Position numbers and translations under genes: made by a program. Positions 1 to 55,506 of a stretch of DNA of 64,000 nucleotides are shown piece after piece. The DNA is taken from contig NIVC01000239.1 in NCBI GenBank assembly GCA_002269645.1, positions 1 to 64,000 on the forward strand. The letters are read 5' to 3'. The notes beneath the pieces were generated by a model. That model saw only the letters and a list, made by a program, of their open reading frames with translations, was not told where the DNA came from and searched no databases. Within the stretch, counting starts at the first letter, position 1. Every line of letters begins with the position of its first letter. This DNA is from Macrostomum lignano. Its lineage: Eukaryota.

Positions 1-130
1 AGGTCAGATCTGTAGACAGGAGGCAGAGACCCGTCAGTCGGAGCCTTGTAGTTCTGCTGGACAGAGTACGCAGACAAGGCCTCGGTGTTGATATTGGATT
101 TGATCGTGAACAGCACTTGCTTGTTGCCAT
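1..130 (-). CDS. Left copy, domain exon 7 (class B), truncated by the window edge
   Basis: Acceptor ttgcag|AT GGC AAC AAG CAA GTG; encodes DGNKQVLFTIKSNINTEALSAYSVQQNYKAPTDGSLPPVYRSDL. Confidence 0.85.
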   Translation of the reverse strand, partial: MATSKCCSRSNPISTPRPCLRTLSSRTTRLRLTGLCLLSTDLT

Positions 131-9100: not shown

Positions 9101-10360
9101 TAAATTCGATGAGAGATAGCTGTATGTGAACAGACTAAACTGCTAGTGCGGCGACCTGGGTTCAAAGCTGAGTGTAAATCTTTTTTATTCAAAAGTAGAA
9201 TTAAGAAGGTGGGCGCTATCATTTTTTATGCGACATGTTTCGCCTCGCGTCAGGTATCGTCAGGCTCTTAAAATTAGTAGCGATTTAATTGTTCATTAAT
9301 ACTTAACAATTAAGACTAAAAACGGGTCGATAAAAGTCAGAAATGTATATAAATTAACAGTAGATTGTACAGTCCGACGGAGCGCTCACAGAGTTGCAAT
9401 GAGGGGAGAGAGGGAGAGAGAGAGAGAGATAGAGAGAGAGAGAAAGAGAGACTATAGCCGATTCTTAGACATTTTGAACAGCACTCATCCCAACATAAAA
9501 TTCACTGCTGAAGGAGGTGGGAAATCTATACCTTTTCTAGACATTCAGATTAATGTTGAAAACGATTGTGTGTCCACCAAAGTTTATCGTAAACCCACCT
9601 ACACTGGTCTTCTGCTAAACTTCAATGCTCTCTGCCCAACCCAGTGGAAAGTGGGCCTGCTGCGTGGTATGCTCCACCGGGCTTTCGAAATCTGTAGCAC
9701 CTGGACTAGTTTCCACGAAGAAATTTGCTTGATTAGCACCTATTTTTCCGAAAACAACTACCCGAAACGGTTCCTCGATTACCACATTAGAAAATTCATT
9801 GATGGTAAAGTCTCAAATCCTAACAATAGACAGAATAAGGAAGAACAGAAAGATCTGAGGATTGATTGCACCCATATCTCCATTCCTTTCTATGGGCCAG
9901 ATTCATTTTAAAAATAAACTCATCAGAGCGTTTAATAAGTATTTAAATGTAAAGCTCATGGTCACTTTCCGTTGCGAGAAAATCGGTCGTTTTGTTAAGA
10001 ATTTGAAATGCCGCGTTTCCAGCTCCTTACGGGCAGGTGTCGTTTACCAATTTCAATGCTCTGGCGACCAGAGTATCACCTACATAGGTGAAACTACCCG
10101 ACACCTGTACGTGAGAAGTAGAGAACATAGGCAAAAGATGTCGGCCGTACACGACCACCTGATGATATGCAAAGAATGCTGTGACAGCCAAATAGATAAA
10201 AACTTTTCCACCATCCATACGTGCTCAAATGAGTACAGACTAAAAGTGCTTGAAGCCCTGTATATAAAATCGCGTAAACCAATCCTAAATAAGCAACTTG
10301 CCAATCACGGTGCCAGTGCCCTCCTTAGAGTATTCTAGGTGTACACTTGTGCTCATCTCA

Positions 10361-10427
<67 letters not shown>

Positions 10428-22678: not shown

Positions 22679-22684
22679 TTTATT
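22679..22684 (-). terminator. Polyadenylation signal AATAAA of the right copy
   Basis: tttatt on the plus strand, about 33 nt after the stop codon in the minus direction. Confidence 0.5.
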
Positions 22685-22716: not shown

Positions 22717-23282
22717 CTACATAAGGTAGATTACCAGCCGATCAGCGTAGCCGCTGCCCACTCTGCTAGGAGCATCCTGGATGTAGTTGTAAACCAGAAC
22801 TGGCAGAGATCCCTTGAAGCCCTCGCTAATCCAGGGACAGGAGTCTTCCTTGTCCGAAATGACAAAGAAGCTGCGCTCGGTGTCACAGCCCCCGCCCGTA
22901 CTGCTGATTGAGAAATGCCGCTTTCTGGATGAGTCGCCATTCAGCGAAAACTGGCTGAATTCAGTCCGGCCGATCCAAAATGGGTACGACGACTCGATCC
23001 GCTCCTTCGAGAACCAGTTTTCGCGAGTCAACTTGTCCGTATCCTTGGCAACGTTGAAAATCACCTGCGACACGATGCTCTTGCCTTCGCGCATCTCAAC
23101 AACTATCCTTGACTTGCCCGACTGCTTCACAGTCAAGGCCAGCTGGTCCAAGAGATCGGAGCGGTACACTGGTGGCAGCGAACCGTCTGTCGGCATTTTG
23201 AAGTCCTGCCTATGCGAAAACACGTGAAGCGCCTCTCGGCCGACATTTGCCTTGATTGTGAACAGAAGCTGCTTGTATTCTT
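22717..23282 (-). CDS. Right copy, terminal domain exon 13 (class B-like, G subtype)
   Basis: Acceptor tttacag|; ends YADRLVIYLM-TAG with no linker and no donor site. Confidence 0.8.
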
Positions 23283-26200
23283 CTGTAAATAGAGAGAAAT
23301 TAAAGAGTGCTACATGAAATAAAGCTTTCATTAGCTTTATTAATAAACTATGTCAGTAGTAGCTTTAAAGGGTCCGGCAAACCCGTTTAATATAAAGCAA
23401 ATACGACTCACCAAAAATAATAAATCTTTTGTATTCGGCACGTGGGTCAAGGAACTCGTTTGACAGATAAATGATCAATCTGTCCGCGTACCCAACGCTT
23501 TCGTGGAACGATCGACCCTGCTGTCGGTTGTAGGCCAGACTCGGAGGAGAGCCTCGCCAGCCTCGAGTTACCCAGTCGCAGCTGCCGCGCGAGTCAGACA
23601 CCATGATGAAGCCTGAATCTCTGGTGCAACCTCCATAGTGGTTGCTGATGTAGAATTTTCGGCTAGCATCCCCTTCTAAAGAAAAGTAGTTGAACTCTTT
23701 CCGACTAATTGGATAAGGGTAAGATGAGTACAGTCTTAGCAGCGAGAACCAGTTCTCTTTGTCGAGCTTGTCAGTGTCGGTGGAAACATCGAATGCCACT
23801 TGAGAGACGACTTTATTGTCTTTGCGCATCTCGACGACCATCTTGGTCATTCCCGACTGCCTCACAGCTCGAGGAAGCTCGTCGATGAGATCGGATCTGT
23901 AGACCGGAGGCAGAGACCCATCGGCAGGCATTTTGTAGTTTTGTTGATGTTTGAATGTCTCCAGAGCCTCCAAGTGCACGTTCGGAACAATGGTGTAAAG
24001 CAGCTGCTTGCTCTTTTCTAAGATGTTTAAAATGGTAAACAGCTTTCATTTGATAATCAGATGAGATAATAATATGAAGACTCTGACTTCAAACCTACCA
24101 AACATGACCTTCCGTTTGAACTCCTCTCGCAGTTCCGTCACCGAGTCCGTCAGGTAGATCGTGAACCGATCAGCATAGTCCACTCCGCTTCTAAAGGTGG
24201 CAGTTCGGTATCTGTTGTACACCAGCACTGGAGCCGAGCCCTTCCAGCCTTCGTTGCCCCAAGTGCACGGATCGCGTTTGTCGGACACCATCCAGAAGCC
24301 TCGATCATTGTCACATCCACCACCAGAGAACGAAACGAAAAAGCGTCTGTTTTGACCAGCGTCTCCGTCAATACTAAAGTAGTTCGTGCTTTGCTTCGGA
24401 TCGATCTTGAACGGATAGGACGAGACGAGTCGAGAGCGCGAGAACCAGTTCATCAGTGTGATCTCGTCGGTCTTCTCTGACAAGTCAAAAACCATTCGAG
24501 CAACCACGTGATCATCTTTTTCCATCTCAGCGACAATCTTTGTCTTTCCTGATTGCTTCACAGTGAGGGCGAGTTGATCGAGCAGGTCAGATCTGTAGAC
24601 AGGAGGCAGAGACCCGTCAGTCGGAGCCTTGTAGTTCTGCTGGACAGAGTAGGCGTGCTTGGCCTCGGTGTTGATGTTGGATTTGATCGTGAACAGCACC
24701 TGCTTGCTGCCATCTGCGTCAATAGAGTTGAATAAAAAATTAATTTTTTCTAGGGCATTCTACGAGGTACTATTGCATATATAGGTAGCTGTCTTGTCCT
24801 TGTAGGCTGGCGACTTTTAAACTAGCCAGTGGACTTACTCAGCGTGTACAGTTTTGCATCAACCTATCTCTCTTTGTCAGTTAGTGACCGTGTACGCTCA
24901 GCCCTAGCGAGGTATACCAACTCCCTGCATTCTTTGTTCTTGAGCTTTTCGTCGGTATCGATCCGCGAACACATGGCCTTGTCTCTATGAATAAAGTCAT
25001 GGTTAACCCAGGGTTTTCAATTGACTTTTTTAAACATTAATATAATGGCACTTTTTCATAAAATGTTAGCTTTTTTCAGCCAATTCTTGGGCACTGTAAT
25101 CCAAGATATGCTCGTATGTTGTCCAAAATAATGCAGCTTTTGTCTGTGGTAGCAAGGCTGCCTGACAGAATATATCATGGAGTTCTATAGAACTCCTTGG
25201 ATTAAATCTTATCCGTGTCAGCTCAAATGGGGCTGCAAAAAGCTATAAAAAAGTTCCAACAGTCAACAAGTAATCGTAATTTTGTTTCTTCAGCAAAATC
25301 TTTGAGATTTTTAAAGCTTTTATATACCAATCTGTGAAGAAATCAGCCAACAGATAAAACGCAGTACTCGTAAATCCTGTGATCCCAATCAATAAACTTA
25401 ACAGCATAACGTACCGATCATGAGTGGCTTCTTGAACTCGGCCCTGAGGTCCGGAAGTTCCTTCGCAAGGTAAATTAGTAGCCTGTCAGCGTATCCTGCG
25501 CTCTCTTCGAACGGCTTTCCAGGTAGTCGACTGTAAATCAAGGTCGGAGCAGATCCCCTCCAGCCTCGAGTCACGTAGTCGCAGTGACCGCGCGCGTCCG
25601 ACACAACAATGAAGCCCGTCTCTCGGTGGCATCCGTGGTGCCAGTTGTTGATGTAGAAGCGTCGCTTCGAGCTTCTCTCGCCTTCCAGAGAAAAGTAGTT
25701 AAACTCTTTTCGATCGACCGAGTACGGATAAGACGACTCAAGTCTCAGCTCCGAGAACCAGTTCTCTTTGTCGAGCTTTTCTGTGTCGGTGGAAACATCG
25801 AACACCACTTGAGAGACGACTTGATTGTCTTTGCGCATCTCGACGACCATCTTGGTCATTCCCGACTGTCTCACAGCTCGAGGAAGCTCGTCGATGAGAT
25901 CGGATCTGTAGACCGGAGGCAGAGATCCATCGGCAGGTATTTTGTAGTTTTGTTGATGCTCAAATGTCTCCAGAGCCTCCAAGTGCACGTTCGGAACAAT
26001 GGTGAACAACAGCTGTTTGTCGTTTTCTAAATTGGAAAGTGATGCAGGTTGGAGTATTTTTTACAGTGCTTATTTCTGGTGAATAAGTTTTGTCGACCTT
26101 AATTAGTCTTATTCGAGCATTTAATGGTTTTAAATGCACGGATCATTTTATTCGTAACGTCTCACAAACTTATACATCCGAGTATAGTAGAAAATTAGTT

Positions 26201-29200
26201 AAATACGGTAAAATCCGATACAACTCACACAAAGCAGCCAGTTAGCATTGGAAGGTCAAACAACCAGGAGACCCAGTGGGTGGTCAATAACAACAACAAT
26301 GACAGCAGCAAGAGCAGCTTGAGTGATGAGGACGTAGTGTTAAGTTTCCTTCGGTCAGCCCGCCCAGAGCAGGGACAATTTAATTGTCGTTTATAAAGGA
26401 CGCGACACGCAGGATTCGTGTAAATGTTTTTGGAGGCTGAATTTCCCTTAGCGTATACTTAAGTAGTCCGTGGCCTAGAGTAGCTCTGACAGGGGGGAAA
26501 TCGTTCCCGACGACACTCACACAGCAGCAGCAGCAGCAGCAGCGGCCCATCGTATCAACAGGTATGGACAGCCACAGTATTAACAACGATGTAGCTGTGG
26601 TCATAGGCATCACCTCTCCGAGGCGACTCGGATGGTCGGGGGCCTGCCGTACTACGATGCCTGCTACCAGGCAACCACCTCTCCTGGTGCGCACACACTA
26701 CATGATTATTTCCCTGAGCTCCAGCTCGTCCGACGCCCCAAGTTTTGACGCTTCTTCTTTTGCCTCTGCTTGCAATCCAAGCCCTAATGACTGCAACTGC
26801 TTCTGTTTTTCGCGCACTCCCGAGGACTTGTCTGCTGGGGGGTAGCCTGGGTAAACTCGGTCCTAGCACCGAAATTCCACTTTTTGGGTTGGCGGTGTCT
26901 TGTACCATAGGTTTGGGTTAGTAGCCCCAAAATTCCCCCTGGCCTAGACGTCGGGGCCCAATCAGGAAGGGATCTCGGGCTTAGGCCCCTGGAAGTGCCA
27001 CTCAGCGGCAGAGCCCCCCCCCAGGGCTGATCCGCGGGAAGCTAGCTCTTTCCCCCCGTTTAACAACAATGACTGCAACCGCTCAGAAGAGATCTCAGAA
27101 GAGATCTCCTATTCATACAGCGCCAAAGCACACTTTGCGAAGTACTTGTTACAATGCAGCGGAATTGTGACATGTGAAAATTGAATGCAGCGGAGTCCGA
27201 CGCTATCAACGGCATCAGATACAAACGTAAAGCGCCGATCACAATTTTGATCCTGATGACCGACACCCCGAGACTCAGCACCCCCGCCTCCGCTTTGCAA
27301 TCGGTCCAGGCCCTGTGCCTCTCCTGCGACGCCAGAATTCACAACGGGACCATCCCGCTCAAATACGCCGATCAAAACTGCAACTCGTTTTGCAATCGCA
27401 CGACAGCCTGCAGAGGAATCACCAGGTACAAGGGGTGGATTTGTTTGAGCGATGTCCGGCGACACCGGACCCGGTCAGTTCGATAGCCAGCCGTTGCGCT
27501 GGTGCGCCCTGAACTAAAACTTCTGCGACCCAGGATCTGAACCCGGCCTGTTGCAGGGGCTGAACCCACAAATTCCGCGCCGCCATCCGCCGATTGCCAC
27601 AAAGTGTGCCCCGACCTTAACAGAACCATTGCAAAGCAGACTGCCTTAAGCAGCCCACATTGCATCACCTCGTGCCACCCGGAGGTGACCCTGGAGCACG
27701 CCGACCGCCCCGCCTGCTGCCGCACCATTAAGCGCAAGGAATCAGTTCTGTTTCTCCAAGGAAACGCCCATGTTACCCTCAAGATTGCCGAACTTCAAAA
27801 CCTTATCGAACAACAAAAACAAGCAATCAACAAAAAAAACAAATAACTTTGCTTTCAATAAATCACTTACCTAACATGACCTTCCGATTGAACTCCTCTC
27901 GCAGTTCCGTCACCGAGTCCGTCAGGTAGATCGTGAATCGATCAGCATAGTCCACTCCGCTTCTAAAGGTGGCAGTTCGGTATCTGTTGTACACCAGCAC
28001 TGGAGCCGAGCCCTTCCAGCCTTCGTTGCCCCAAGTGCACGGATCGCGTTTGTCGGACACCATCCAGAAGCCTCGATCATTGTCACATCCACCACCAGAG
28101 AACGAAACGAAAAAGCGTCTGTTTTGACCAGCGTCTCCGTCAATACTAAAGTAGTTCGTGCTTTGCTTCGGATCGATCTTGAACGGATAGGACGAGACGA
28201 GTCGAGAGCGCGAGAACCAGTTCATCAGTGTGATCTCGTCGGTCTTCTCTGACAAGTCAAAAACCATTCGAGCAACCACGTGATCATCTTTTTCCATCTC
28301 AGCGACAATCTTTGTCTTTCCTGATTGCTTCACAGTGAGGGCGAGTTGATCGAGCAGGTCAGATCTGTAGACAGGAGGCAGAGACCCGTCAGTCGGAGCC
28401 TTGTAGTTCTGCTGGACAGAGTATGCGTGCTTGGCCTCGGTGTTGATGTTGGATTTGATCGTGAACAGCACCTGCTTGCTGCCATCTGCAATTAGTAGAT
28501 TTTTAAACGTTCGGCATCAATAATGGTTAGATTTATTTTTCATATTTTCTGAAACTCCAAATTGAGATGTTTCGAAATTAGTGATTTGTGTGACTCTCCT
28601 AGGTTCTCTCCTTAGGTGTCATTAAGAAGTAACTCCAGAGGAAGTTTATTCAGTATTTGTAAAGTAACTGATTAGGCGTTCTCTGTTTAATTTTTTATAG
28701 TTTTTTATTACCAGTTCATTCCATGAATCTAAGAAGCTGCAGCCTTTGCTGTTTACTTAGTTATTGCAAACTCTTTTGAGACTGGCGTAGTTTAAATGTT
28801 AATTCGGAAAGAATAGGTCTGCCAGTGATAATTAATACCTGCCCATTGCATACAGGCTGTCAAATCATATGCGAGCGTATTACTTGGCTAGGTGGCTTAT
28901 TGTTGTTTTGATTTTGTCCTCATTCTTTCTTGGAGTACATAGTCCCGTGCTTTATAGCCAGAAGACCCTGTCCAGTTAATCGAAGTTGCTGTAATACGTA
29001 AATCTACAGCAAGCTTGATTACTTAAAGCAACCCTTTCTCACTATCTTCGAGGAGAAGGCTTTTAGAAGTCAACGGCCAATACTAGCAAACTTACTAAAT
29101 ATTAAATTTTTCGTGACAAGACCTATTCTAATTATTCGCTTGCGATATATTTGTTACAACTGACACCCGAATATTACTGGTTCTCTGCTATCGACACAAG

Positions 29201-32200
29201 GTACCAGTATTTACAAGTACAAACCGGCTTTGCACTCTGCTAAAAATATATAAGGCGTCATCCGCGGGCCCCAAAAGCTAATTCAGCGCCTCAGAAGTTC
29301 AGAGGAGTCATACTAGTACTACGGAAGACAGTATCAATTCCGAAAACACTAAGAAAAGAATCTTTGTTTAATTGGACTATCGAAGTTACTGGGTTGCCGG
29401 CATTAGCTGGAGGGATCAATAGTTCCTTGATATCAGAAGGTTGGATAAGGGACATCAAACGATAAGTTTTGCCATTTCTGAGCCATTTAAAGCAAAGCAT
29501 CAGAACCCTTCAAAAGTGTCTCCCTGCCCCGCAGATGTTTCTAAGATGAATCAGAAATATTATATTCAATATTTTTGGTGAAGGAGTGCGTTTCCACCTC
29601 ACTGTTAAATACTCCTAAGGCAACCGATGTATCATTTAAAAAAGTTATCAATAATAGAAGTTGATAAATAGTAAAATTTGTCATTTCCCTTCAAGTACAA
29701 GTTATAAAGATATAAAAAACCTAATGGCAAAAAAGCAAAACTTCACTAACCTCGAATTTGGGCTACGTTTCACTCATAATCAAATTAAAAAAAATTCTAT
29801 TGAGTTAACACTGACTTAGTAAAATAAATAAAGAGATTTTTCTGACCTAGTGGTGGATCCATGCTTCAACTATTAGCTTACCGATAATGAGTGGCTTCTT
29901 GAACTCGGCCCTGAGGTCCGGAAGTTCCTTCGCAAGGTAAATCAGTAGCCTGTCAGCGTATCCTGCGCTCTCTTCGAACGGCTTTCCAGGTAGTCGACTG
30001 TAAATCAAGGTCGGAGCAGATCCCCTCCAGCCTCGAGTCACGTAGTCGCAGTGACCGCGCGCGTCCGACACAAGAATGAAGCTCGTCTCTCGGTGGCATC
30101 CGTGGTGCCAGTTGTTGATGTAGAAGCGTCGCTTCGAGCTTCTCTCGCCTTCCAGAGAAAAGTAGTTAAACTCTTTCCGATCGACCGAGTACGGATAAGA
30201 CGACTCAAGTCTAAGCTCCGAGAACCAGTTCTCTTTGTCGAGCTTCTCTGTGTCGGTGGAAACATCGAACACCACTTGGGAGACGACTTGATTGTCGTCT
30301 TTGCGCATCTCGACGACCATCTTGGTCATTCCCGACTGCCTCACAGCTCGAGGAAGCTCGTCGATGAGATCGGATCTATAGACCGGAGGCAGAGATCCGT
30401 TGGCGGGCATTTTGTAGTTTTGTTGATGCTCGAATGTCTCCAGAGCCTCTAAGTGCACGTTCGGGATGATGGTGAACAACAGCTGCTTGTCTTTTTCTGC
30501 AACAGAAGAACATGACAAATAATCATTACAAAGATCTTGCCCGACGTTGTAATTCGATTTTTGCTTCTGCCTCCTAACCACCCTTATCATTGCATATTTA
30601 ACCGCAATTTTCAGTTACAATTGTGATATAAATTCTACGTTAATGCATTTAATGCGCATGACTGATACGGTCTGACCTCAATTTTCTATGTGAATATCTA
30701 CTTTGTAAACGCCTTGAAATTTTGTCTGGATTCTAAAAGAGATATTCTCTATTTTTACTTTTGTGTAATAATGAAATAGCTTTCACTTTTCTTATCAAGA
30801 AAAGCGCAAAAAGCGACGAAATTTCCATGAAAAAAGTGTTAATTTGACATTTCTTACCAAACATGATCTTCCGATTGAACTCCTCTCGCAGTTCCGTCAC
30901 CGAGTCCGTCAGGTAGATCGTGAACCGATCAGCATAGTCCACTCCGCTTCTAAAGGTGGCAGTTCGGTATCTGTTGTACGCCAGCACTGGAGCCGAGCCC
31001 TTCCAGCCTTCGTTGCCCCAAGTGCACGGATCGCGTTTGTCGGACACCATCCAGAAGCCTCGATCATTGTCACATCCACCACCAGAGAACGAAACGAAAA
31101 AGCGTCTGTTTTGACCAGCGTCTCCGTCAATACTAAAGTAGTTCGTGCTTTGCTTCGGATCGATCTTGAACGGATAGGACGAGACGAGTCGAGAGCGCGA
31201 GAACCAGTTCATCAGTGTGATCTCGTCGGTCTTCTCTGACAAGTCAAAAACCATTCGAGCAACCACGTGATCATCTTTTTCCATCTCAGCGACAATCTTT
31301 GTCTTTCCTGATTGCTTCACAGTGAGGGCGAGTTGATCGAGCAGGTCAGATCTGTAGACAGGAGGCAGAGACCCGTCAGTCGGAGCCTTGTAGTTCTGCT
31401 GGACAGAGTATGCGTGCTTGGCCTCGGTGTTGATGTTGGATTTGATCGTGAACAGCACCTGCTTGCTGCCATCTGCAATTAGTAGATTTTTAAACGTTCG
31501 GCATCAATAATGGTTAGATTTATTTTTCATATTTTCTGAAACTCCAAATTGAGATGTTTCGAAATTAGTGATTTGTGTGACTCTCCTAGGTTCTCTCCTT
31601 AGGTGTCATTAAGAAGTAACTCCAGAGGAAGTTTATTCAGTATTTGTAAAGTAACTGATTAGGCGTTCTCTGTTTAATTTTTTATAGTTTTTTATTACCA
31701 GTTCATTCCATGAATCTAAGAAGCTGCAGCCTTTGCTGTTTACTTAGTTATTGCAAACTCTTTTGAGACTGGCGTAGTTTAAATGTTAATTCGGAAAGAA
31801 TAGGTCTGCCAGTGATAATTAATACCTGCCCATTGCATACAGGCTGTCAAATCATATGCGAGCGTATTACTTGGCTAGGTGGCTTATTGTTGTTTTGATT
31901 TTGTCCTCATTCTTTCTTGGAGTACATAGTCCCGTGCTTTATAGCCAGAAGACCCTGTCCAGTTAATCGAAGTTGCTGTAATACGTAAATCTACAGCAAG
32001 CTTGATTACTTAAAGCAACCCTTTCTCACTATCTTCGAGGAGAAGGCTTTTAGAAGTCAACGGCCAATACTAGCAAACTTACTAAATATTAAATTTTTCG
32101 TGACAAGACCTATTCTAATTATTCGCTTGCGATATATTTGTTACAACTGACACCCGAATATTACTGGTTCTCTGCTATCGACACAAGGTACCAGTATTTA

Positions 32201-35200: not shown

Positions 35201-38200
35201 TTTAGGTCGATCGCTGTAACTTTTCCGGTTGTTTTCATCGGTAATAAGTGAAATTCGTAAAATGGGTAATACGAGCGTAGTTGCTTGGCACAATGTTATA
35301 AAGATTCACCGTCCTAGAGCGTGGAGACCGGGTGAATTCAAATAACTACACTTCTCTTGTTCAGGTTCACTGGATGTACGTAGCTTCTTTACTCGTAAGA
35401 TTCAGATATTCAGATATTTAGATAGAGAAATCCTGATTGTACGTGAATTGTACGTTTTTTCTTCGGAGCTTGGGCGTTCGAGTCCCAACAAGTGTCTATC
35501 GAAACCGAATCGTCAATGAGCTGCATTGTTGCCCTTAGAGAATTCTGATGGCAATATTATCTTTTACAAATTTTAACCGAAGAAATAAATACTGGATTGA
35601 ATTTTCTTTAGTACTAACAGAAGACTTATTCCTTCTACTTAGTTTGCTGTTTTTTGGAAATTTAAAACTCTCACAAGATAAATTTTCGATTGGAAAAATT
35701 CGTTAAATTGGGTACGCTCGTAGTTGGAAGGCTAGAATCGTCTAGACTATGTTGCAGACAATATAGTTTCCAGCACATTTTACTGCAGTTGCTGAAGAGA
35801 ATTTCATTTTGGAGCAATACAAGTCCTAAAAGGCAAAAACTTTTGTAGAAACGTAGGACAAAGAACAAAGAAGGAACAAAAATTGACCTAAAGGTACGAG
35901 TATATCCTACCGATGATTAGCGGCTTCTTAAACTCGGCTCGAGGATCCAGTACCTCTTTTGTCAGGTAAATTACTAGTCTGTCCGCGTACCCAACGCTGT
36001 CGTGGAACGATCGACCCTGCTCTCGGTTGTAGGCCAGACTCGGAGGAGAGCCTCGCCAGCCTCGAGTTACCCAGTCGCAGTTGCCGCGTGAGTCAGACAC
36101 CATGATGAAGCCTGAATCTCGGTCACAGCCTCCATAGTGGTTGCTGATGTAGAATCTTCGCTTCTGGCCAGTATCCCCATCCAAAGAAAAGTAGTTGAAC
36201 TCTTTCCGACTAATTGGATAAGGGTAAGATGAGTACAGTCTTAACAGCGAGAACCAGTTCTCTTTGTCGAGCTTCTCTGTGTCGGTGGAAACATCGAATG
36301 CCACTTGAGAGACGACTTTATTGTCTTTGCGCATCTCGACGACCATCTTGGTCATTCCCGACTGTCTCACAGCTCGAGGAAGCTCGTCGATGAGATCGGA
36401 TCTGTAGACCGGAGGCAGAGATCCGTTGGCGGGCATTTTGTAGTTTTGTTGATGCTCAAATGTCTCTAGAGCCTCCAAGTGCACGTTCGGAACAATTGTG
36501 TAAAGCAGGTGCTTGCCTTTTTCTAAAAATTTTTACTTGAGTTTTTGTTATTGAATTTCCTATTGTTAAGCATCCAATTGAATTTTTCCATAAATTCTTT
36601 CGATCAAATAAAATGTCTTACCAAACAGGACCGCCTTTGTGAACTCTGGGCGCAATTCGTCCACGTGGTTTGTCAAGTAGACCACGAAGCGGTCCGCATA
36701 GTCCACCCCGGTGCGAAATGGCGCCGTTCGGAATCTGTTGTATAGCAGCACTGGCGCGGCTCCCTTCCAGCCCTGTGATCCCCAGTTGCAAGGATCCTTC
36801 CTGTCTGTGACAATCCAGAATCCTAAATCGTTGTCACATCCCTTTCCCGTGTCCGTTACAGAGAATCCTCGCTTTATGGATGTGTCACCATCCACGCTAA
36901 AGTAGTTCAGATGAATTTTCTTGGAAATCTGATAAGGGTACGCTGCGACGAGTCTATCTCTTGAGAACCAATTGAGTAAGGTAAGCGAATCCGTGTCAGT
37001 TGCAACGTCAAATACAAGTCTCGCTACTACTGCGTTGTTTTTGCGCATCTCTGCAACCATCTTGCTACGACCTGAACGCCTCACGGTTTTATCCATCTGG
37101 TCCAGCAGGTCCGACCGGTAAATTGGGGGCAGGGAGCGATCGGATGGAATCGGGTAGTCCTGCTGATGCTTGAATGTGTCCACGGCTTCTTTCCCAACGT
37201 TGGGCGTGATTGTGTACAGGATTTGCTTGTCTCCGTCTGAAAGCCAATAGAAATAGATTAAATGTTTCGTGCCGAAAAGTTGCTAACACAATCAAAGATG
37301 CTGTATAACTCTGGCGTTCGTTTCCTCAATACATGAACCTCTAGCTTCTTAAAAGCCCGTTCACATTACCACTAATAGCTCTGCACGTCAAAGATGGCTT
37401 AAATCAATGTACAGCTGGTTCAGATCCATTTTAAAAACTTATTTGAAAGATATCTAACCTTTGGAACTTTTTGCGGCAAAGTGAACCGGTGTTAGGATTT
37501 CTGTTCCCTGAAGTTAAGGATCTCCTGCACGGAGACCCAACACGAAAGATTACGCCATTTTACAATCGCCCGCACGGAAGGTTTCTATGCACAATAAAAA
37601 GCTAGAGATTATAATTTTCGACATATTAATTATGGGGGAGATCTGTAACTGGAGATCCTAAATCAAACCCTAGTTTTTGCACTCGTGAAGGAAATCGGCA
37701 AACGGTGCAGAATCTCCGAGGGGACAACGGAATCTGGTTTAAGATCTCCGGATAGGGAGACCTGACCATGCCTTGGAGATCCTACAACGGTTACGCATCT
37801 CCTATCGCGGAGATCCATAACCGTTTGTAGTCTCCGAAGGAGATCTTACACCCTGTAAAGTCTCCGGTTGGAGATCCCAGCCTGTTTGCAGTCTCCGGAT
37901 CGGCGACCCAAACTGGCCGGAGCCTCAGAGGCTCTAAACTGTAACACCGGTCTTTGATTATTACTCGTGATTATTATTAGGGCATTAAAATAAATATATC
38001 TTATTTTACTGCTTCGTTCAACTACCCTAAGTATAAGTGCCCAAAGTAATATACTTGCACAATGCTTTTGCAAAAATGTTCGCACGCACCAACAATGAAC
38101 GGTTGCCTGAACTTCCATCGTCTGTCCTCGACCTCGTGCGTGAGGTACACAAGCATCCGGTCGGCCGTGTCGACGCCAGCATGGAACGGCTTGTTCTGCA

Positions 38201-41200
38201 GCCGGTTGTACAGCAGCAACGGCGGGGAGCCGCGCCAGTTGCGGTTGGCCCAGTTGCAACTGTCTCTGGCATCTGAGATAGCGATGAACCCGGCGTCAAC
38301 ATGACAGCCTCCATAGTTGTAGCTGATGTAAAACCGCCGCTGCTCGCCCACGTCTCCATCCAAAGAGAAGTAGTTGAACTTGGTCTTGTCCACCAGGTAG
38401 GGATAGGAGGACTCCAGCCGTTCTAGCGAGAACCAGTTGTCTAAGGTCAGACTGTCGACATCCTTAGTCACATTGAAAACCAACTGAGCCACCACTGAGT
38501 GGTCCTTGACGAGCTCCATCACCATCTGGGTCATGCCCGAGTCTTTTACGGTCCGCGACAGATCGTCCAGCAGGTCAGACCGGTACAAAATCGGCAAATC
38601 GTCGTCGATTGGCGCGCGATAGTTTTGTTGCTGCCTGAACGTTTCCAGCGCGCTCTTGTGGATGTTGGCCTTGATCGTGTACAGAAGCTGTTTTCTTTCC
38701 GCTGTAGCAGATCAGGGTGACTTTCAACTATAATTGCCTTAGTTATTCGATAATGTTAATAGTTTCAGTAAAGTGCTCACCGTGGAAGAAGGGCTTCCTG
38801 AACTCGGCTCGAAACTCGTCCACAGTGTCGGTGAGGTACACCAGAAACTGGTCGGCATACGCGGCACCCTGTTGCAGCGTGCGGTCCTTAAATCTATTGT
38901 AGATCAGCGCCGGTGCGAGGCCCTTCCAGCCGTTGTGGCCCCAGCCACAGGGATCTCTGGCGCCGGACACGAGCCAGAAGCCGCGGTCACCATTGCAGCC
39001 GTCGAAGCTCGTTGCTATGAAGAACCTGCGCTCCTTGTTTGCGTCACCCTCGATGGAGAAGGCGCTAAACTTGGCCACGTCGTCAAGGCGGTAGGGCCAG
39101 GCGCCGATCAGGCGGGACGGCGAGAACCAGTTGAACTGGTCTAGGCTGTCCGGGTAGTCGCCGACATCGAAGACGACGCGCATCACGACGGCCCTGTCGA
39201 CGCGCATCTCGGCGACCATGTAGGTTTTGTCTAGACGGCGGACAGTGTCGGGCAGCTCGTCGAGCAGGTCGGACCGGTAGACGGCCGGCAGCGGCTCATT
39301 GGGCGATGGGGCTGGCCGGTTGCCGTTGCCCCGGGTGACGAACGCCTTCTGCGGGTCCTCGCCGATGTTGCTCCGAATAGTGAACAGCAGCGTCTTGCCG
39401 TCCTCTACGATTTTCAAACGATTGTTTCAGTGCAAGCTCGAAGTTTTACAGCAGTTTCAGTTTGGGAAATCGCCACCTGTATCGGCCATATGCTCGTACT
39501 CATTCTTTGACCCTCGACGAAACCGATCGTCTTTTCCAAATTTAAATTTTTTGCTAGTTAGACTAAATTTATAAGCACATTCTATATATTCTAATTTTTT
39601 CATGCATTATTGGTCATGCAATACCTGTAGCACTCTATACTGCGATGAATTTCATTTCGATGACACAACGTAAAACTTGAAAAGCATCAGCACCTTAGTT
39701 CATCGATTTTCTCAGTCTTTCTGTTCATCTACCTTGAAGTATACTTAGAAACTATCTTAAATGAATGGAAATACTATAGGCTCATAGCTTAAGTAGATTA
39801 AAATATTCTCTATTTTATCAGTTATTCAGAAAATCCGTCTCTCATCTCAAAGTTCAGGTAGATTTCTGGTGAAATTACGAGGGTTGTCAGAAAGGTTCTG
39901 TGTACAAAGTTCTGTTTGTCTGTGTATTCGAGAATAGCTCAGCTCTATGAATAGCTGAAGAGTTGGGGTTTTAGCCATAGATATATACATATATAAAGAG
40001 TCGCTAGCTTTAGTTTTAGAGCAATAGATAATTTCTAGCCTGTGTAGCAGTAGTTTTTCAACCACACCCATGTCGCATTCCGTCCCGCGAAAGAGTTTTT
40101 CTAAGCGCGACAATCGATATCATCAAATTTCATGTCCTTCAGGGGCGTTCAGCAACCGAGATTCTTGAAGAAATGCGGCAGACCATATAGGAGACTTTTG
40201 CCCATCTTATGAGACGTTGGGCTATTGCCATTCGCAACGGCAAAAAAGACCTCGACGACAAGCCACGCAGTGGACGACCAACGAGTGCTCGGACTGACAG
40301 CCTGGTGAGTCAGGTGGAGGCAGCCGTGCTGCAGGACCGGAGACTGACCACCAGGCAGCTGGCTGATGCCATAGGGGTGTCCCACGACTCAGTCCACAAG
40401 ATCCTGACCGAGGACCTTGGGATGCGCAAGGTCTGTGCCAAGTGGGTGCCGCATCTGCTCACTGACGATCAGCGGGCTCGGCGGGTCGCCATGTGCGCAT
40501 CCAACCTGCAGCGGTGTCGGCGGGAGGGCATGGCGTTCCTGCAAAGGATCGTTGCCTGCGACGAAACCTGGGCGCATTCTTGGGAGACGGAGTTGAAGCG
40601 GCAGAGTGCCACTTGGTGCAGGCCAGGTTCTCCGCGACCTCAAAAGGCCATCCGGAGCATCGGCCAGCTGAAGGTCATGCTTTCTTCGACCGGGAGGGTC
40701 TGTTGTTCGATCAGCCTGTGCCAGTGGGGCAGACGGTCAATGGTGATTTCTACCTGTCGGTTCTGGTGAAATTTCGGCGTGCCATTCGGGACAAAAGGCC
40801 TGCACTTCACGCGGCTGGCCCGATTCTGCTTCACGACAACGCAGCCCCGCACCGAAAGCAAAGCGTGCTGGCTACGATCGAGTCGTGGGGGTGGGAAATT
40901 CTTCCGCATCCGCCTTATTCCCCGTACTTAAGTCCATGCGACCTTTTCCTCTTCCTTCGCATCAAGGAGTCGATGCGGGGCCAGCGCTTCAGCGCAGAAG
41001 AAGACGTGAATCGGGCCTACAAGGCTGGCATTGCCGCCGTGACGAACAATGGCATGACTGCAGGCATTGACGGGCTGGTGCGGCGTTGGGAGAAGTGCAT
41101 TGAAGCTGAGGGCTCATACTTTGAGTGAATAAATGTTAAGGAAGACATTTGTAACTTTTCATGTTTCTATACTGCTTATCGTTCTCAAGTTATTACAATA

Positions 41201-42430
41201 TACACAGAACTTTTCTGATAACCTTCATAGAACTGCGTCGAGTTGAATTTATCGATCTATCTATAGACGGTTAATTAGAGGCCTATAGTTAGCTCGTAAT
41301 TATTTTGCCAACAACTATAGTTACCGCTGGAGCTGAACTGATAACGCATGGCTCACACAGTAAAAATGGAACTTAGCAGGTCACAGGTTTCCGCTCGTGT
41401 CTCTCTATTAGATTTTGCTTATTTTGTCAACACTGTTCGGCAATTGATCTCTGAAAATAATCAAAACTAATAGATAAGGCTGTTGCACTGTTCTACGTAG
41501 ACGATAAGAAATGAAAGGTGCGTTGACCTTGCATTCGGCCTTTAGTAATCTTTCACCATTTGTTTTTTTAATGACACCATACGAAAGCCAGACCCGGCCA
41601 GATAAGATCGAATTTAAAATTCAACAAGATTTATGGCTCGTTTGCGAGAAAGCTCGATGCTAATGACCGAATGAATGAACGCGAATCAGACAGAGAGAAT
41701 AATCGAGACCTGAATAATGTTCACACACAAAAGGCTCTAAAAATAAGGCAAATAACCATGACTTAAGCAACTTAAACAGGCGCATGTGCTGCGGCGGGGC
41801 CAGGGGCGCAAAATATATGGTGCCCCCGCAATAGCTTTGGCGTCCCTGATTCTAGTGATCCAGACACGATTGACCCAGACACGATTGACTCTGACACGAT
41901 TGACCCAGACAAGATTGACCCAGACACGATTGACCCAGACAAGATTGATCCAGACACGACTGATCCAGACACGATTGATCCAGACACTATTGATCCAGGT
42001 ACGGTTGATCCAGACAATATTGATCCAGACATGATTGATACAGACACAATGGATCCAGACACGATGGATCCAGACACGATTGACCCAGACACGATTGACC
42101 CAGACACGATGGATCCAGACACAATAGAATGACCGAGACACGATTGATCCACACAAGAATGACGCTGACACATGACTCAGAATGACCCAGGTACAAATGT
42201 TGCAGTCACATTTGTCTCGAGCATAAGACGTAAGCAACTCAAGCAGACTTATCGGCAAAACACTCACAGCAGACTGAGCAGAGGCAAGCAAGGGCATCCG
42301 AGATTCGAAGCAGAGGGGCAGAAGGCTTACCAAATGCAAAGCCATCGGGCGAGGCCACATCGGCAGCTTTAACAGATGCGGTGGCCCACAACAATGCGAG
42401 CAGCCAGCCGCGAAGATCCCGCCAAGCCAT
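22717..42430 (-). CDS. Uncharacterised secreted multi-domain protein, right (complete) copy: signal peptide plus 13 tandem ~200-aa domains, ~2678 aa
   Basis: Hand-built join (minus): 42331-42430, 38781-39404, 38090-38701, 36622-37236, 35911-36522, 33845-34459, 32869-33483, 30858-31472, 29882-30496, 27871-28485, 25415-26026, 24099-24713, 23412-24017, 22717-23282. All introns are GT..AG and phase 1. The total is 8037 nt with an open frame ending in TAG at 22717-22719. Shared domain motifs: KQLLFTI..N, LPPVYRSDL.D, NWFS..RL.SSYPY, NYFS..GD..RRF, GGC..D.GF, C.W...GW.G..P.L.YN, YADR..IYL. Confidence 0.85.
23412..24017 (-). CDS. Right copy, domain exon 12 (class A, C subtype)
   Basis: 606 nt; acceptor cttag|, donor G|gtgagt. 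Confidence 0.85.
24099..24713 (-). CDS. Right copy, domain exon 11 (class B)
   Basis: 615 nt; acceptor acgcag|, donor G|gtaggt. Confidence 0.85.
25415..26026 (-). CDS. Right copy, domain exon 10 (class A)
   Basis: 612 nt; acceptor tttag|, donor G|gtacgt. Confidence 0.85.
27150..27850 (+). mobile_element. Decayed 5' fragment of a non-LTR retrotransposon (PHD-like fingers and start of APE endonuclease) inside intron 10 of the right copy
   Basis: ALCLSCDARI..NCNSFC..AC.GI..GWIC and CPDLNRTIAK..HCITSCH are PHD-like. LFLQGNAH..KIAELQNLI resembles the APE N-terminal LQxNxxG..K..EL motif. Confidence 0.5.
27871..28485 (-). CDS. Right copy, domain exon 9 (class B)
   Basis: 615 nt; acceptor ttgcag|, donor G|gtaagt. 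Confidence 0.85.
29882..30496 (-). CDS. Right copy, domain exon 8 (class A)
   Basis: 615 nt; acceptor ttgcag|, donor G|gtaagc. Confidence 0.85.
30858..31472 (-). CDS. Right copy, domain exon 7 (class B)
   Basis: 615 nt; acceptor ttgcag|, donor G|gtaaga. Confidence 0.85.
32869..33483 (-). CDS. Right copy, domain exon 6 (class A)
   Basis: 615 nt; identical translation to exon 8, offset 2987 bp. Confidence 0.85.
33845..34459 (-). CDS. Right copy, domain exon 5 (class B)
   Basis: 615 nt; acceptor ttgcag|, donor G|gtaaga. Confidence 0.85.
35911..36522 (-). CDS. Right copy, domain exon 4 (class A, A/C mosaic)
   Basis: 612 nt; acceptor tttag|, donor G|gtagga. Confidence 0.85.
36622..37236 (-). 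CDS. Right copy, domain exon 3 (class B, D subtype)
   Basis: 615 nt; near-identical to 6518-7132. Confidence 0.85.
37490..37946. mobile_element. 457-bp solo LTR with 4-bp target-site duplication
   Basis: TGTTAG...GTAACA termini and CCGG on both sides (37486-37489, 37947-37950). The paralogous intron shows the empty site gaaccggtcttt at about 7386-7397. Confidence 0.85.
38090..38701 (-). CDS. Right copy, domain exon 2 (class A, E subtype)
   Basis: 612 nt; near-identical to 7527-8138. Confidence 0.8.
38781..39404 (-). CDS. Right copy, domain exon 1 (class B, F subtype)
   Basis: 624 nt; near-identical to 8218-8841. Confidence 0.8.
39878..41227 (+). mobile_element. Mariner (Tc1/mariner, DD34D) transposon, frameshifted and non-functional
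   Basis: TA flanks and ~29-bp imperfect TIRs (CGAGGGTTGTCAGAAAGGTTCTGTGTACA / reverse of TGAAGGTTATCAGAAAAGTTCTGTGTATA). Motifs: PRSGRP, KWVPHLL, IVACDETW, LHDNAAPH and PPYSPYLSPCD, with 34 residues between the 2nd and 3rd Asp. Frameshifts and a stop occur in the 5' half. Confidence 0.92.
41858..42190. repeat. 15-bp minisatellite (gacccagacacgatt), intron 1 of the right copy
   Basis: Same unit family as the flanks of 13957-15318. Confidence 0.9.
42331..42430 (-). CDS. Right copy, signal-peptide exon
   Basis: Encodes MAWRDLRGWLLALLWATASVKA-ADVASPDGFAF then G|gtaagc; 100 nt, phase-1 donor compatible with every domain exon. Confidence 0.75.
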
Positions 42431-42823
42431 GGTACTTGGAGATGCTGTGCTTCGGCTGTCGGTTCTTCCTAAAGTGCAAGTTGTATTGCATAACAGGTGA
42501 GTCATTTTTCGGTACAAATAAACGTTTTTTAAGCGTAGGCAGGCACGAAAAAGTAGCGCCTAAAATATGTTTAATTACCTGTGATAGTCACGGAGTGAAG
42601 CGGGAGTTCTCTGGCAAACGAAAATGCAAAGTTGCCTTATAGATTGTCTATGGTGTGTCTCAGGTGAAGCATTAATACGCTCGTATACCTTTTTCAGGAG
42701 TTCGTTATCGCCTGGGGCAAAAAGTAAAGATAAAAGATTCAAGAGTCTGTTAGTGCAGCAGTTTACAAGAGTGGAGAAAGAACACTGGAATCTTTCTCCA
42801 TGCCATAGTCAGTGCTGTAGACG

Positions 42824-44467: not shown

Positions 44468-45190
<723 letters not shown>

Positions 45191-45784: not shown

Positions 45785-47199
<1,415 letters not shown>

Positions 47200-55440: not shown

Positions 55441-55506
55441 TCAACAATTTCAAAAAACGAACTATGCTATTCAGGTAAACTCTATTAAACAATTGCCAGC
55501 CCCCAT

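What the first reader, a model, noticed from the sequence alone, without database searches (positions are those of the whole stretch)
22717..42430. Unannotated giant secreted protein built one-domain-per-exon from an unnamed ~200-aa module
The sequence shows a signal-peptide exon and 13 exons of 566-624 nt, each encoding a whole domain. All are joined by phase-1 GT-AG introns into one 8037-nt frame (~2678 aa) with no transmembrane segment. Each domain keeps two Cys (GGC and C-x-W, probably one disulfide) and aromatic-rich motifs (NWFS, SSYPY, NYFS, GW.G, YN). Symmetric phase 1-1 exons are the established hallmark of shuffled extracellular modules. I cannot name the domain. From memory, the pattern YRS.L.D..NWFS..RL..S..NYFSI.G..RRF.I...YGGC..D.GW..C.W..P..Y..AD resembles an unnamed module in invertebrate secreted proteins, possibly a distant fibrinogen-like or lectin fold. 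The inference is a multivalent secreted binding protein (mucus, adhesion or immune recognition).
Basis: partly seen in the sequence, partly recalled or inferred. Interest (0 to 1): 0.9.

Follow-up and report, generated by a model that had tools for sequence, protein, structure and literature searches.

The report
Giant secreted protein of fibrinogen-like modules
This flatworm (Macrostomum lignano) locus encodes a real ~306 kDa secreted protein made of 13 copies, one per exon, of an unnamed ~200-residue module that is the "headless" body of a previously undescribed branch of the fibrinogen-related-domain superfamily, so it is probably a multivalent extracellular binding protein whose ligand is unknown.

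Summary
On the minus strand, a 100-nt signal-peptide exon and 13 module exons (566-624 nt) join through phase-1 GT-AG introns into one 8037-nt frame (2678 aa). There are two Cys per module and no transmembrane segment. dN/dS is 0.05-0.3, and AATAAA lies 32 nt after the stop.

The module has no Pfam, NCBIfam or PDB sequence match. An exhaustive profile search found 663 relatives: many M. lignano paralogues, corals, a sponge, a hemichordate, amphioxus, a snail and some bacteria. Complete members start with the 'YCDxxxxGGGW' head shared with fibrinogen-related domains (FReD). The window module begins exactly after that head.

A confident model of a complete unit (pLDDT 92.6) matches only FReD-superfamily structures (intelectins, ficolins, fibrinogen, angiopoietin-like; E down to 3.7e-7, TM 0.3-0.47). 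By sequence profile the body is not a Fibrinogen_C domain.

Partial, uncharacterised database models of that copy exist.

Function as a multivalent lectin-like binder is inferred, not shown. I rate it a new variant of a known kind, of moderate interest.

The parts
42431..42477 (-). Conserved 5' leader directly upstream of the ATG (minimum extent of the 5' UTR; the transcription start was not determined)
   Evidence: 100% identical to the equivalent stretch of the tandem paralogue, while sequence further upstream is 58-74% identical
42331..42430 (-). Exon 1: ATG plus signal peptide (MAWRDLRGWLLALLWATASVKA|ADV...). It holds 33 codons plus 1 base and has a phase-1 donor G|gtaagc
   Evidence: 90-96% identical to the paralogue's exon 12215-12116
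38781..39404 (-). Exon 2 = module 1 (624 nt, phase 1-1)
38090..38701 (-). Exon 3 = module 2 (612 nt)
36622..37236 (-). Exon 4 = module 3 (615 nt)
35911..36522 (-). Exon 5 = module 4 (612 nt)
33845..34459 (-). Exon 6 = module 5 (615 nt; type A of the alternating pair)
32869..33483 (-). Exon 7 = module 6 (615 nt; type B)
30858..31472 (-). Exon 8 = module 7 (615 nt; type A, 99% identical to module 5)
29882..30496 (-). Exon 9 = module 8 (615 nt; type B, 100% identical to module 6)
27871..28485 (-). Exon 10 = module 9 (615 nt; type A)
25415..26026 (-). Exon 11 = module 10 (612 nt; type B, 97% identical to module 6)
24099..24713 (-). Exon 12 = module 11 (615 nt; type A)
23412..24017 (-). Exon 13 = module 12 (606 nt; 89% identical to module 4)
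22717..23282 (-). Exon 14 = module 13 (566 nt including the TAG stop). It ends ...ADRLVIYLM*, the same point at which single-module relatives end
22679..22684 (-). AATAAA polyadenylation signal 32 nt after the stop codon
27866..33839 (-). Two tandem 2987-bp units, each with two exons and two introns. They differ at 4 positions only, and their introns are identical
3..12215 (-). Second, tandem paralogous gene with the same plan. Signal exon 12215-12116; module exons 8841-8218, 8138-7527, 7132-6518, 6385-5780, 5504-4890, 4571-3957; partial exon 128-3. It runs off the window start
   Evidence: Modules 1-3 and 6 are 99-100% identical in protein to those of the first gene. Database models P0001/P0002/P0005/P0006 match it at 95-100%

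Best explanation
The region is a genuine protein-coding gene of the flatworm Macrostomum lignano (or a near-identical strain). Its product enters the secretory pathway through a cleavable signal peptide and is released as a soluble ~306 kDa string of 13 compact globular modules joined by ~15-residue linkers.

Each module is the 'body' of an unnamed extracellular domain family. The complete form of that family starts with the YCDxxxxGGGW head that also opens fibrinogen-related domains (FReD), intelectins and fibrillar-collagen C-propeptides. In Macrostomum the head has been lost. What remains is a central beta-sheet region plus a family-specific C-terminal half stapled by one disulfide, and it is encoded by a single symmetric phase-1 exon.

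The gene most likely arose from a two-exon ancestor (signal exon + module exon, as still seen in the paralogue P0030) by repeated tandem duplication of the module exon. That process is still going on.

Inferred mechanism: like ficolins and intelectins, which must oligomerise to bind well, the protein binds a repetitive extracellular ligand (most likely a glycan or a polymer surface on microbes, mucus or matrix) with high avidity. Here the multivalency is built into one chain.

Shown: gene structure, coding constraint, secretory signal, family membership, and the remote FReD-superfamily relationship of the family. Inferred: that the headless module folds and binds on its own, the nature of the ligand, and the tissue of expression.
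For: Gene model:
- The exons, phases and single 8037-nt frame are established.
- dN/dS is 0.05-0.31.
- The signal exon and leader are conserved between the tandem copies.
- A poly(A) signal follows the stop.
- Independent database models use the same junctions.

Secretion:
- The N-terminal hydrophobic core is followed by V-K-A|A, and there is no other hydrophobic stretch.
- pI is 7.3, with no mucin-like or low-complexity region and one Cys pair per module.

Family:
- The profile search of 1.84 billion representatives gave 663 hits at E<=1e-3 and 155 at E<=1e-10.
- Named members come from M. lignano (at least 10 paralogue clusters), Branchiostoma, corals, Dendronephthya, Corticium, Ptychodera, Batillaria, Myxococcales and Rhodobacterales.
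- hhalign of window-type modules against complete units gives probability 99.5%, E 2.9e-23.
- The HMM places 'LLFTI' on 'MIFKA' directly after GGGW.

FReD link:
- The head is recognised by Pfam Fibrinogen_C (profile positions 2-60 only), by COLFI and by NCBIfam NF040941.
- hhalign of complete units against real FReDs gives probability 98.1%, E 1.1e-13 over the head.
- The AlphaFold model of a complete unit (pLDDT 92.6, pTM 0.90) gives 47 Foldseek hits at E<=1e-3. All are FReD superfamily, with ~130-150 residues superposed at ~4.4 A.
- The model of the window module alone (pLDDT 81.9, pTM 0.84) gives only weak hits, but nearly all are FReDs.

Extracellular use:
- Relatives combine the module with ZP, EGF, FN3, TSP1, Sushi, C-type lectin and Ig domains, and with a receptor tyrosine phosphatase ectodomain.

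Origin:
- The paralogue P0030 is a signal exon (phase 1) plus one module exon.
- The 2987-bp units differ at 4 nt only.
Against: - No transcript, proteomic or in situ evidence could be reached, so splicing of all 14 exons into one mRNA is not directly shown.
- The canonical ligand-binding P subdomain of FReDs is not recognisable in the body (hhalign probability 0.3%), so lectin activity cannot be transferred by homology.
- Foldseek TM-scores stay below 0.5 even for the complete unit, and the headless module alone gives no significant match.
- The number of modules may be inflated or deflated by assembly of near-identical 3-kb repeats.
- Only 4 N-glycosylation sequons and no obvious metal or sugar-binding motif were identified.
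Confidence: 0.6

Rival explanations
1. The protein is a structural secretion product rather than a recognition molecule. It would be a bulk component of a flatworm-specific secretion (rhabdites or epidermal mucus, cement-gland or eggshell material, or seminal fluid), where tandem globular modules simply provide mass, spacing or self-association.
For: - It is very large and repetitive, with actively duplicating modules.
- The gene itself is tandemly duplicated.
- The family is strongly expanded in M. lignano.
- No recognisable ligand-binding P subdomain is present.
Against: - There are no low-complexity, cross-linking (free Cys, Tyr/Gly-rich, Lys-rich) or mucin-type regions, and the composition is that of ordinary globular domains.
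- In other species the module is used singly, fused to coiled coils or set among recognition domains, which fits binding rather than bulk.
- The known M. lignano adhesive proteins have a completely different architecture (PMC6410801).
Confidence: 0.25
2. The array is partly an artefact or is not one gene. Near-identical 3-kb repeats may have been mis-assembled, or the exons may belong to several shorter transcripts, or some may be dead copies, so the 2678-aa protein does not exist as such.
For: - Two 2987-bp units differ at only 4 nt and have identical introns.
- Database models from this gene family differ in module number and order, and some read through introns.
- No transcript evidence was obtainable.
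Against: - All 13 exons keep open frames, matching phase-1 splice sites and both cysteines.
- dN/dS is well below 1, also for the divergent modules.
- Only the first exon has a start codon and signal peptide, and only the last has a stop followed by AATAAA.
- The tandem paralogue has the same plan.
Confidence: 0.1
3. The module is simply a divergent but ordinary fibrinogen-related domain (Pfam Fibrinogen_C), so the protein is a FREP-like lectin that binds acetylated sugars through the canonical P-subdomain pocket.
For: - Nearly all of the top Foldseek hits are FReDs.
- One M. lignano paralogue is auto-named 'Fibrinogen C-terminal domain-containing'.
- A disulfide-bounded C..D.G[FW]W...C loop recalls the FReD P-domain loop. 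This is my own reading of the sequence and is not supported by any alignment tool.
Against: - There is no Pfam hit at E<=1.
- The family profile finds no PDB sequence at E<=10.
- hhalign of the body against 28 real FReDs gives probability 0.3%.
- Pfam matches in complete relatives stop at profile position ~60 of 221.
- The head and its disulfide are absent from the window module.
Confidence: 0.05

Closest known systems
Fibrinogen-related domains (FReD; Pfam PF00147: fibrinogen beta/gamma C-termini, ficolins, angiopoietins, tenascins, FIBCD1, tachylectin-5, snail FREPs)
   Same: - Complete members of the module's family open with the same Cys...YCDxxxxGGGW head (Pfam/NCBIfam hits; hhalign 98.1%).
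- Their predicted fold superposes on the FReD A+B subdomains.
- Both are extracellular and of similar size (~200-225 aa).
- Both act in multivalent assemblies.
   Different: - The window module lacks the head and its disulfide.
- The body has no detectable sequence-profile similarity to the FReD B/P subdomains.
- TM-scores are only 0.3-0.47.
- Multivalency comes from 13 tandem copies in one chain rather than from collagen or coiled-coil oligomerisation.
Intelectins / X-type lectins (human intelectin-1, Xenopus XEEL, lamprey LSVL)
   Same: - These are the best Foldseek matches of the complete unit (E 3.7e-7 to 4.6e-6).
- Like this family, they keep a FReD-like N-terminal part followed by a lineage-specific remainder.
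   Different: - No sequence similarity was detected.
- TM is about 0.40 with rmsd 8.5-11 A over the long alignments.
- The intelectin Ca2+/exocyclic-diol site could not be assessed.
Bacterial 'fibrinogen-like YCDxxxxGGGW domain-containing proteins' (NCBIfam NF040941) and the uncharacterised coral, amphioxus, hemichordate and sponge proteins found here
   Same: - True family members. They share the NWF / N.FSI.G / R.FFIN..YGGC..D.GW...C.W / AD body at E down to 1e-30 and beyond.
- Myxococcales proteins carry 2-3 tandem complete units at the C-terminus.
   Different: - They mostly retain the head, or have a coiled coil in its place.
- They are single-module, or are mixed with other domains.
- None is characterised, and none has 13 headless copies.
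Fibrillar collagen C-propeptide (COLFI, Pfam PF01410)
   Same: Its N-terminal motif also matches the family head (COLFI profile positions ~20-97).
   Different: Only the head matches. No COLFI structure appeared among the fold matches.

Membership tests
Fibrinogen_C / FReD (Pfam PF00147) | Significant match to the family profile over the whole ~220-residue domain | tested here: not met
   No Pfam hit at E<=1 for six window modules. In complete relatives the match covers only profile positions ~2-60 of 221.
Fibrinogen_C / FReD (Pfam PF00147) | N-terminal A subdomain with the Cys...YCDxxxxGGGW motif and its disulfide | tested here: not met
   The window modules start at the residue equivalent to the one after GGGW and contain only the two C-terminal Cys. 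NF040941 hits relatives but not the window module.
Fibrinogen_C / FReD (Pfam PF00147) | Homology of the body to the B and P subdomains (profile-profile) | tested here: not met
   hhalign of a 143-sequence body alignment against 28 database FReDs gave probability 0.3%. Complete units align over the 46-column head only. The FReD seed was validated against the PDB at E~1e-100.
Fibrinogen_C / FReD (Pfam PF00147) | FReD three-dimensional fold | tested here: inconclusive
   Window module model: best E 0.085, TM 0.35, though nearly all top hits are FReDs. Complete-unit model: 47 hits at E<=1e-3, all FReD superfamily, core ~130-150 columns at ~4.4 A, but global TM 0.3-0.47.
Fibrinogen_C / FReD (Pfam PF00147) | P-subdomain Ca2+ site and acetyl/ligand-binding pocket | not testable with these tools
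   Model coordinates and residue-level structural alignments were not available, and no sequence alignment to the P subdomain exists.
Unnamed 'FReD-headed NWF/YGGC' family (corals, amphioxus, hemichordate, sponge, snail, flatworm, some bacteria) | Significant profile match over the body (NWF ... N.FSI.G ... R.FFIN..YGGC..D.GW ... C.W ... AD) | tested here: met
   663 hits at E<=1e-3 with a window/M. lignano module profile. hhalign against complete units gives probability 99.5%, E 2.9e-23 over 136 columns.
Unnamed 'FReD-headed NWF/YGGC' family | One conserved disulfide pair in the C-terminal half | tested here: met
   Both Cys are invariant in all window modules and invariant or nearly invariant across 73 relatives.
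Intelectin / X-type lectin | Intelectin-specific domain and Ca2+-dependent exocyclic-diol site | not tested
   Only a fold-level resemblance of the complete unit was seen (E 3.7e-7, TM 0.40). No sequence match to any PDB chain.
Exon-shuffled extracellular module (symmetric phase 1-1 exon) | The whole module lies in one exon flanked by phase-1 introns, in a secreted or extracellular context | tested here: met
   All 13 (+6) module exons are phase 1-1. The single-module paralogue P0030 has the same phase-1 intron between the signal exon and the module exon. Relatives combine the module with ZP, EGF, FN3, TSP1, Sushi and CLECT domains.

The most novel reading that the evidence does not exclude
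The 'body' is a new ligand-binding unit that replaces the canonical P subdomain. It would define a previously unrecognised, ancient lectin or adhesin family shared by marine invertebrates and a few bacterial lineages (possibly through horizontal transfer). Macrostomum would have converted it into single-chain 13-valent agglutinins by shedding the head and amplifying one phase-1 exon. That would be a new route to avidity in the fibrinogen-related superfamily, and a copy-number-variable recognition locus in a flatworm.
Probability: 0.3. Interest if true: 0.65.

Novelty: new variant of a known kind. Interest (0 to 1): 0.5.

Why it matters
- **New domain family.** It defines a domain family that current libraries do not model (no hit in Pfam 2025 or NCBIfam 2026, and no solved structure). 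It places that family as a distinct branch of the fibrinogen-related superfamily, alongside FReDs and intelectins. That is directly usable for annotating hundreds of 'uncharacterised' proteins in corals, amphioxus, hemichordates, sponges, molluscs, flatworms and some bacteria.
- **Clean example of module evolution.** The head/body boundary coincides with a phase-1 intron. A two-exon ancestor still exists, and exon-pair duplications only 4 nt apart show the array is still growing.
- **Candidate effector in a model flatworm.** M. lignano is a model for regeneration, adhesion and reproduction. A pair of tandem 300-kDa secreted multivalent proteins is a concrete candidate for mucus, immune or secretion biology that can be tested by in situ hybridisation and RNAi.

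Tried and rejected
- **Direct sequence matches.** Pfam on six modules gave nothing at E<=1. phmmer of module 1 against PDB sequences gave only noise. A 73-sequence family profile against PDB sequences gave nothing at E<=10. NCBIfam on the module gave nothing (one search failed because I passed out-of-frame exon coordinates).
- **Word-indexed protein search.** With half the protein as query it found only 4 close relatives. The broad family appeared only with the exhaustive profile search.
- **Genomic context for paralogues.** Look-ups by exact product for P0001, P0003 and P0004 had no record. Only P0030 was retrievable.
- **Literature.** Searches for Macrostomum + fibrinogen, GGGWT, the LOC identifiers of relatives, and Mlig/UniProt identifiers of paralogues found no description of the family or gene. 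The M. lignano adhesive proteins Mlig-ap1 and Mlig-ap2 have unrelated architectures.
- **Hidden N-terminal exon.** I looked in intron 1 for an exon resembling the ~200-residue N-terminal regions of paralogues P0003, P0012 and P0002. None was found.
- **Non-coding RNA.** An Rfam scan of the window found none.
- **Automatic database names of relatives.** Names such as 'Peptidase_S9', 'PKD_channel', 'MULTIHEME_CYTC' and 'Saccharopine dehydrogenase' were not reproduced by Pfam and were disregarded.
- **Rejected readings.** A mucin (no S/T/P-rich region), a membrane protein and a canonical FReD.
Full report
**1. What is in the sequence**

Stop-to-stop translation of the minus strand between 22.7 and 39.4 kb gives 13 open frames of 211-259 codons. 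All share the pattern ..LL[FY]TI..YRSDL..NWFS..FS..G..R.F..GC..C..AD..YL.

For every frame there is one phase-1 acceptor with a polypyrimidine tract and YAG just upstream of the LLFTI strand. There is also one phase-1 donor (G|gt[ag]ag-like) about 15 codons after the AD..YL strand.

Upstream, at 42430, an ATG opens MAWRDLRGWLLALLWATASVKAADVASPDGFAF and ends in G|gtaagc, which is again phase 1.

Joining the 14 exons gives exactly 8037 nt and 2678 codons with one terminal stop.
- Each module has two Cys.
- The only strongly hydrophobic stretch is the signal peptide.
- There are 4 N-glycosylation sequons.
- The mature chain is ~306 kDa with pI 7.3. It has no Ser/Thr/Pro-rich or low-complexity stretch and no dibasic processing sites.
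- AATAAA lies 32 nt after the stop.

**2. Is it a real gene?**

Four lines of evidence say yes.

(a) Matched exons evolve under purifying selection. dN/dS is 0.05-0.15 between near-identical copies and 0.20-0.35 between older copies.

(b) The window holds a second, tandem copy of the whole gene on the same strand.
- Its signal exon is 12215-12116 (MAWRHLRDWLLALLWTIASVEA...).
- Its module exons are 8841-8218, 8138-7527, 7132-6518, 6385-5780, 5504-4890 and 4571-3957.
- A partial exon at 128-3 is cut by the window edge.
- Between the two genes, the signal exon plus a 47-nt leader is 90-100% identical, while the surrounding promoter and intron sequence is only 45-74% identical.

(c) Public protein models of 551-2137 residues match the second gene's exons at 95-100% and join modules at the same junction residues. 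The tool masks their source names, as it does for proteins encoded by the window. So an independent annotation used the same splice sites.

(d) A single-module M. lignano paralogue (P0030, GenBank assembly GCA_002269645.1) consists of a signal-peptide exon ending in phase 1 (ACAG|gtaagt) and one exon holding the whole module (ccctag|AC...). That is the presumptive ancestral plan.

No transcript data could be reached, so the full-length mRNA remains to be demonstrated.

**3. Organism and local history**

The nearest named relatives are all Macrostomum lignano proteins, and the masked models are 95-100% identical to the window. The window is therefore M. lignano or a near-identical strain.

Modules 5-11 alternate between two types:
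- A: modules 5, 7, 9 and 11, at least 98% identical to each other.
- B: modules 6, 8 and 10, 97-100% identical to each other.

Two adjacent 2987-bp units (27866-30852 and 30853-33839), each with two exons and two introns, differ at only 4 nucleotides, and their introns are identical. Either unequal crossing-over is very recent or the assembler mis-counted the units. The module number should therefore be treated as provisional.

**4. What the module is**

Direct searches fail:
- No Pfam family at E<=1.
- No NCBIfam family.
- No PDB sequence match with a single module or with a 73-sequence profile at E<=10.

A word-indexed search found only four close relatives. An exhaustive HMM search of 1.84 billion representative proteins, using a 14-module profile, found 663 proteins at E<=1e-3 and 155 at E<=1e-10.

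Named members are:
- At least ten M. lignano paralogue clusters. These include single-module secreted proteins, 2-6-module proteins and a receptor-type tyrosine phosphatase ectodomain.
- Branchiostoma proteins, one of which also has EGF, FN3 and ZP domains.
- A snail 'secreted protein'.
- From a second search: many stony corals, an octocoral, a sponge, a hemichordate, Myxococcales and PEP-CTERM/VPLPA-CTERM proteins of Rhodobacterales.

All are uncharacterised. Other partners in the same proteins are TSP1, Sushi, EGF/C-type lectin, and TIG and FG-GAP repeats. This is an extracellular or surface repertoire.

**5. The link to fibrinogen-related domains**

In the complete form of the family, the body is preceded by C..(G.Y.I.P)...VYCDM..GGGWT.
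- Pfam Fibrinogen_C recognises this head, but only over profile positions ~2-60 of 221.
- COLFI recognises it over positions ~20-97.
- The 46-residue NCBIfam model 'fibrinogen-like YCDxxxxGGGW domain' (NF040941) recognises it at E 1e-12 to 1e-21.

The HMM alignment puts the first strand of the window module (LLFTI) on MIFKA, directly after GGGW. Profile-profile alignment of window-type modules with complete units gives 99.5% probability, E 2.9e-23.

Each Macrostomum exon therefore begins precisely at the head/body boundary, and the head with its disulfide is absent. Among 72 single-domain relatives retrieved with the headless profile, only 6 have the head. That count is biased by the query.

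**6. Fold**

An AlphaFold2 model of a window module from the 14-module alignment is confident (pLDDT 81.9, pTM 0.84). It gives no significant Foldseek match in the PDB (best E 0.085, TM 0.35), yet almost all of the top 50 are fibrinogen, ficolin, angiopoietin-like or tenascin domains.

A model of a complete coral unit from a 66-sequence alignment is very confident (pLDDT 92.6, pTM 0.90). It gives 47 matches at E<=1e-3, all from the FReD superfamily:
- intelectin-1 (3.7e-7)
- lamprey LSVL and Xenopus XEEL
- ANGPTL3 and FGL1
- fibrinogen gamma and tenascin-R
- ficolins, FIBCD1 and angiopoietin-2

The well-superposed core is ~130-150 columns at ~4.4 A, and global TM is 0.30-0.47. That core is longer than the ~50-residue head, so the similarity reaches into the central sheet, which is the N-terminal half of the window module.

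For a sequence-level test I did the following:
- I validated the seed against the PDB: FIBCD1, ficolin-2, angiopoietin-2, tenascin and fibrinogen gamma at E~1e-100 over their full length.
- I used it to retrieve real FReDs from sponges to mammals.
- I aligned 28 of those.

hhalign then gave two results:
- Complete units against FReDs: 98.1% probability, E 1.1e-13, but over the 46-column head only.
- Body against FReDs: 0.3% probability.

The conclusion is that the family is a distinct, unnamed branch of the FReD superfamily, comparable in status to intelectins. It has a shared head and central sheet and a family-specific C-terminal half. The window module is its headless body and is not a member of Pfam Fibrinogen_C.

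**7. How it most likely works**

Shown: the protein is a secreted, soluble chain of 13 independently encoded globular modules. Each has one disulfide, and the modules are joined by short linkers.

Inferred: FReD-superfamily proteins (ficolins, intelectins, tachylectins, FIBCD1, FREPs) typically recognise repetitive glycan or acetyl-group patterns with weak single-site affinity, and they depend on oligomerisation for avidity. This rests on established knowledge of those families.
- Amphioxus relatives fuse a headless body to a predicted coiled coil. This is my reading of the P0041 sequence.
- Bacterial relatives place 2-3 units at the tip of surface proteins.
- Macrostomum achieves the same multivalency by tandem repetition in one chain.

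I therefore favour a multivalent binder or agglutinin of a repetitive extracellular ligand (microbial surface, mucus or matrix polymer). My confidence is about 0.6 for 'secreted multivalent binding protein', and much lower for any particular ligand.

The main rival is a bulk structural secretion component (0.25). Its weakness is the absence of any cross-linking or low-complexity chemistry. An assembly or annotation artefact (0.1) and an ordinary FReD lectin (0.05) are less likely, for the reasons given in the rival explanations.

**8. Novelty and verdict**

Its functional inference is reasonable but untested. 'Unannotated' is too strong, because fragmentary uncharacterised models of the sister copy exist.

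No paper in the searchable library mentions the gene, its paralogues or the named relatives.

I class it as a new variant of a known kind:
- an unmodelled domain family within the fibrinogen-related superfamily;
- a clean exon-level head loss;
- an actively amplifying single-chain multivalent architecture.

Interest is 0.5. It is useful for annotation and is a tractable candidate in a model flatworm, but it is not a conceptual surprise.

Noticed in passing
window 3-12215 (minus strand): A second, tandem paralogue of the giant gene with its own signal exon (12215-12116) and at least 7 module exons. It is cut by the window start. Its upstream 21-bp minisatellite is duplicated with it.
   Followed up: yes
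window 39876-41229: A dead mariner/Tc1-like transposon inside intron 1. It has 29-nt terminal inverted repeats (39876-39904 / 41201-41229) and a frameshifted transposase (ORFs 40209-40769 and 40493-41128, with weak HTH_32, Transposase_1 and DDE_3 hits). It is absent from the paralogue's intron 1.
   Followed up: partly
window 27866-33839: Two tandem 2987-bp units (two exons and two introns each) differ at only 4 nt and have identical introns. This is either a very recent duplication or an assembly miscount.
   Followed up: partly
window 42677-43900 and 12667-13436; 44428-45244; 13916-15490 and 41772-42173; 51809-53470; 54964-55488: Long minisatellite arrays flank and separate the genes: a 21-bp unit upstream of both genes, an 8-bp unit, and other units of unmeasured period. 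They generate long spurious ORFs on both strands.
   Followed up: no
window 46714-47199 (+): An ORF containing ...[24 protein letters not shown]..., the signature of an Iroquois-type TALE homeobox exon. It is a neighbouring gene unrelated to the finding.
   Followed up: no
window 55507-56094 (-): An ORF (...[32 protein letters not shown]...) resembling the C-terminal part of a GDP-fucose protein O-fucosyltransferase-type enzyme. This is recalled from memory and was not tested.
   Followed up: no
window 27372-27782 and 37846-38259 (minus strand, inside introns): GC-rich ORFs of 136-137 codons lie inside two introns. One database model (P0005) reads through a similar intronic sequence, which suggests an intron-retention artefact in that model or a repeated element.
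   Followed up: no
L001 8001-9105 (GCA_002269645.1, NIVC01001493.1): The single-module paralogue P0030 is a signal exon plus one module exon separated by a phase-1 intron at the same position as in the giant gene. It is the likely ancestral gene plan.
   Followed up: yes
relatives P0029 and P0044 (bacterial-type giant proteins): Complete (head-bearing) units occur as 2-3 C-terminal tandem copies in proteins with TIG, FG-GAP and MopE-type repeats. Other members occur in Myxococcales and in Rhodobacterales PEP-CTERM proteins. The metazoan-bacterial distribution suggests horizontal transfer.
   Followed up: partly
relatives P0011, P0012, P0013, P0014, P0016, P0060 and others: Automatic database names of family members (Peptidase_S9, PKD_channel, MULTIHEME_CYTC, DUF4091, Sema, Jacalin-type lectin, Saccharopine dehydrogenase) were not reproduced by Pfam scans (P0011-P0014, P0060; the others were not scanned) and look unreliable.
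   Followed up: partly
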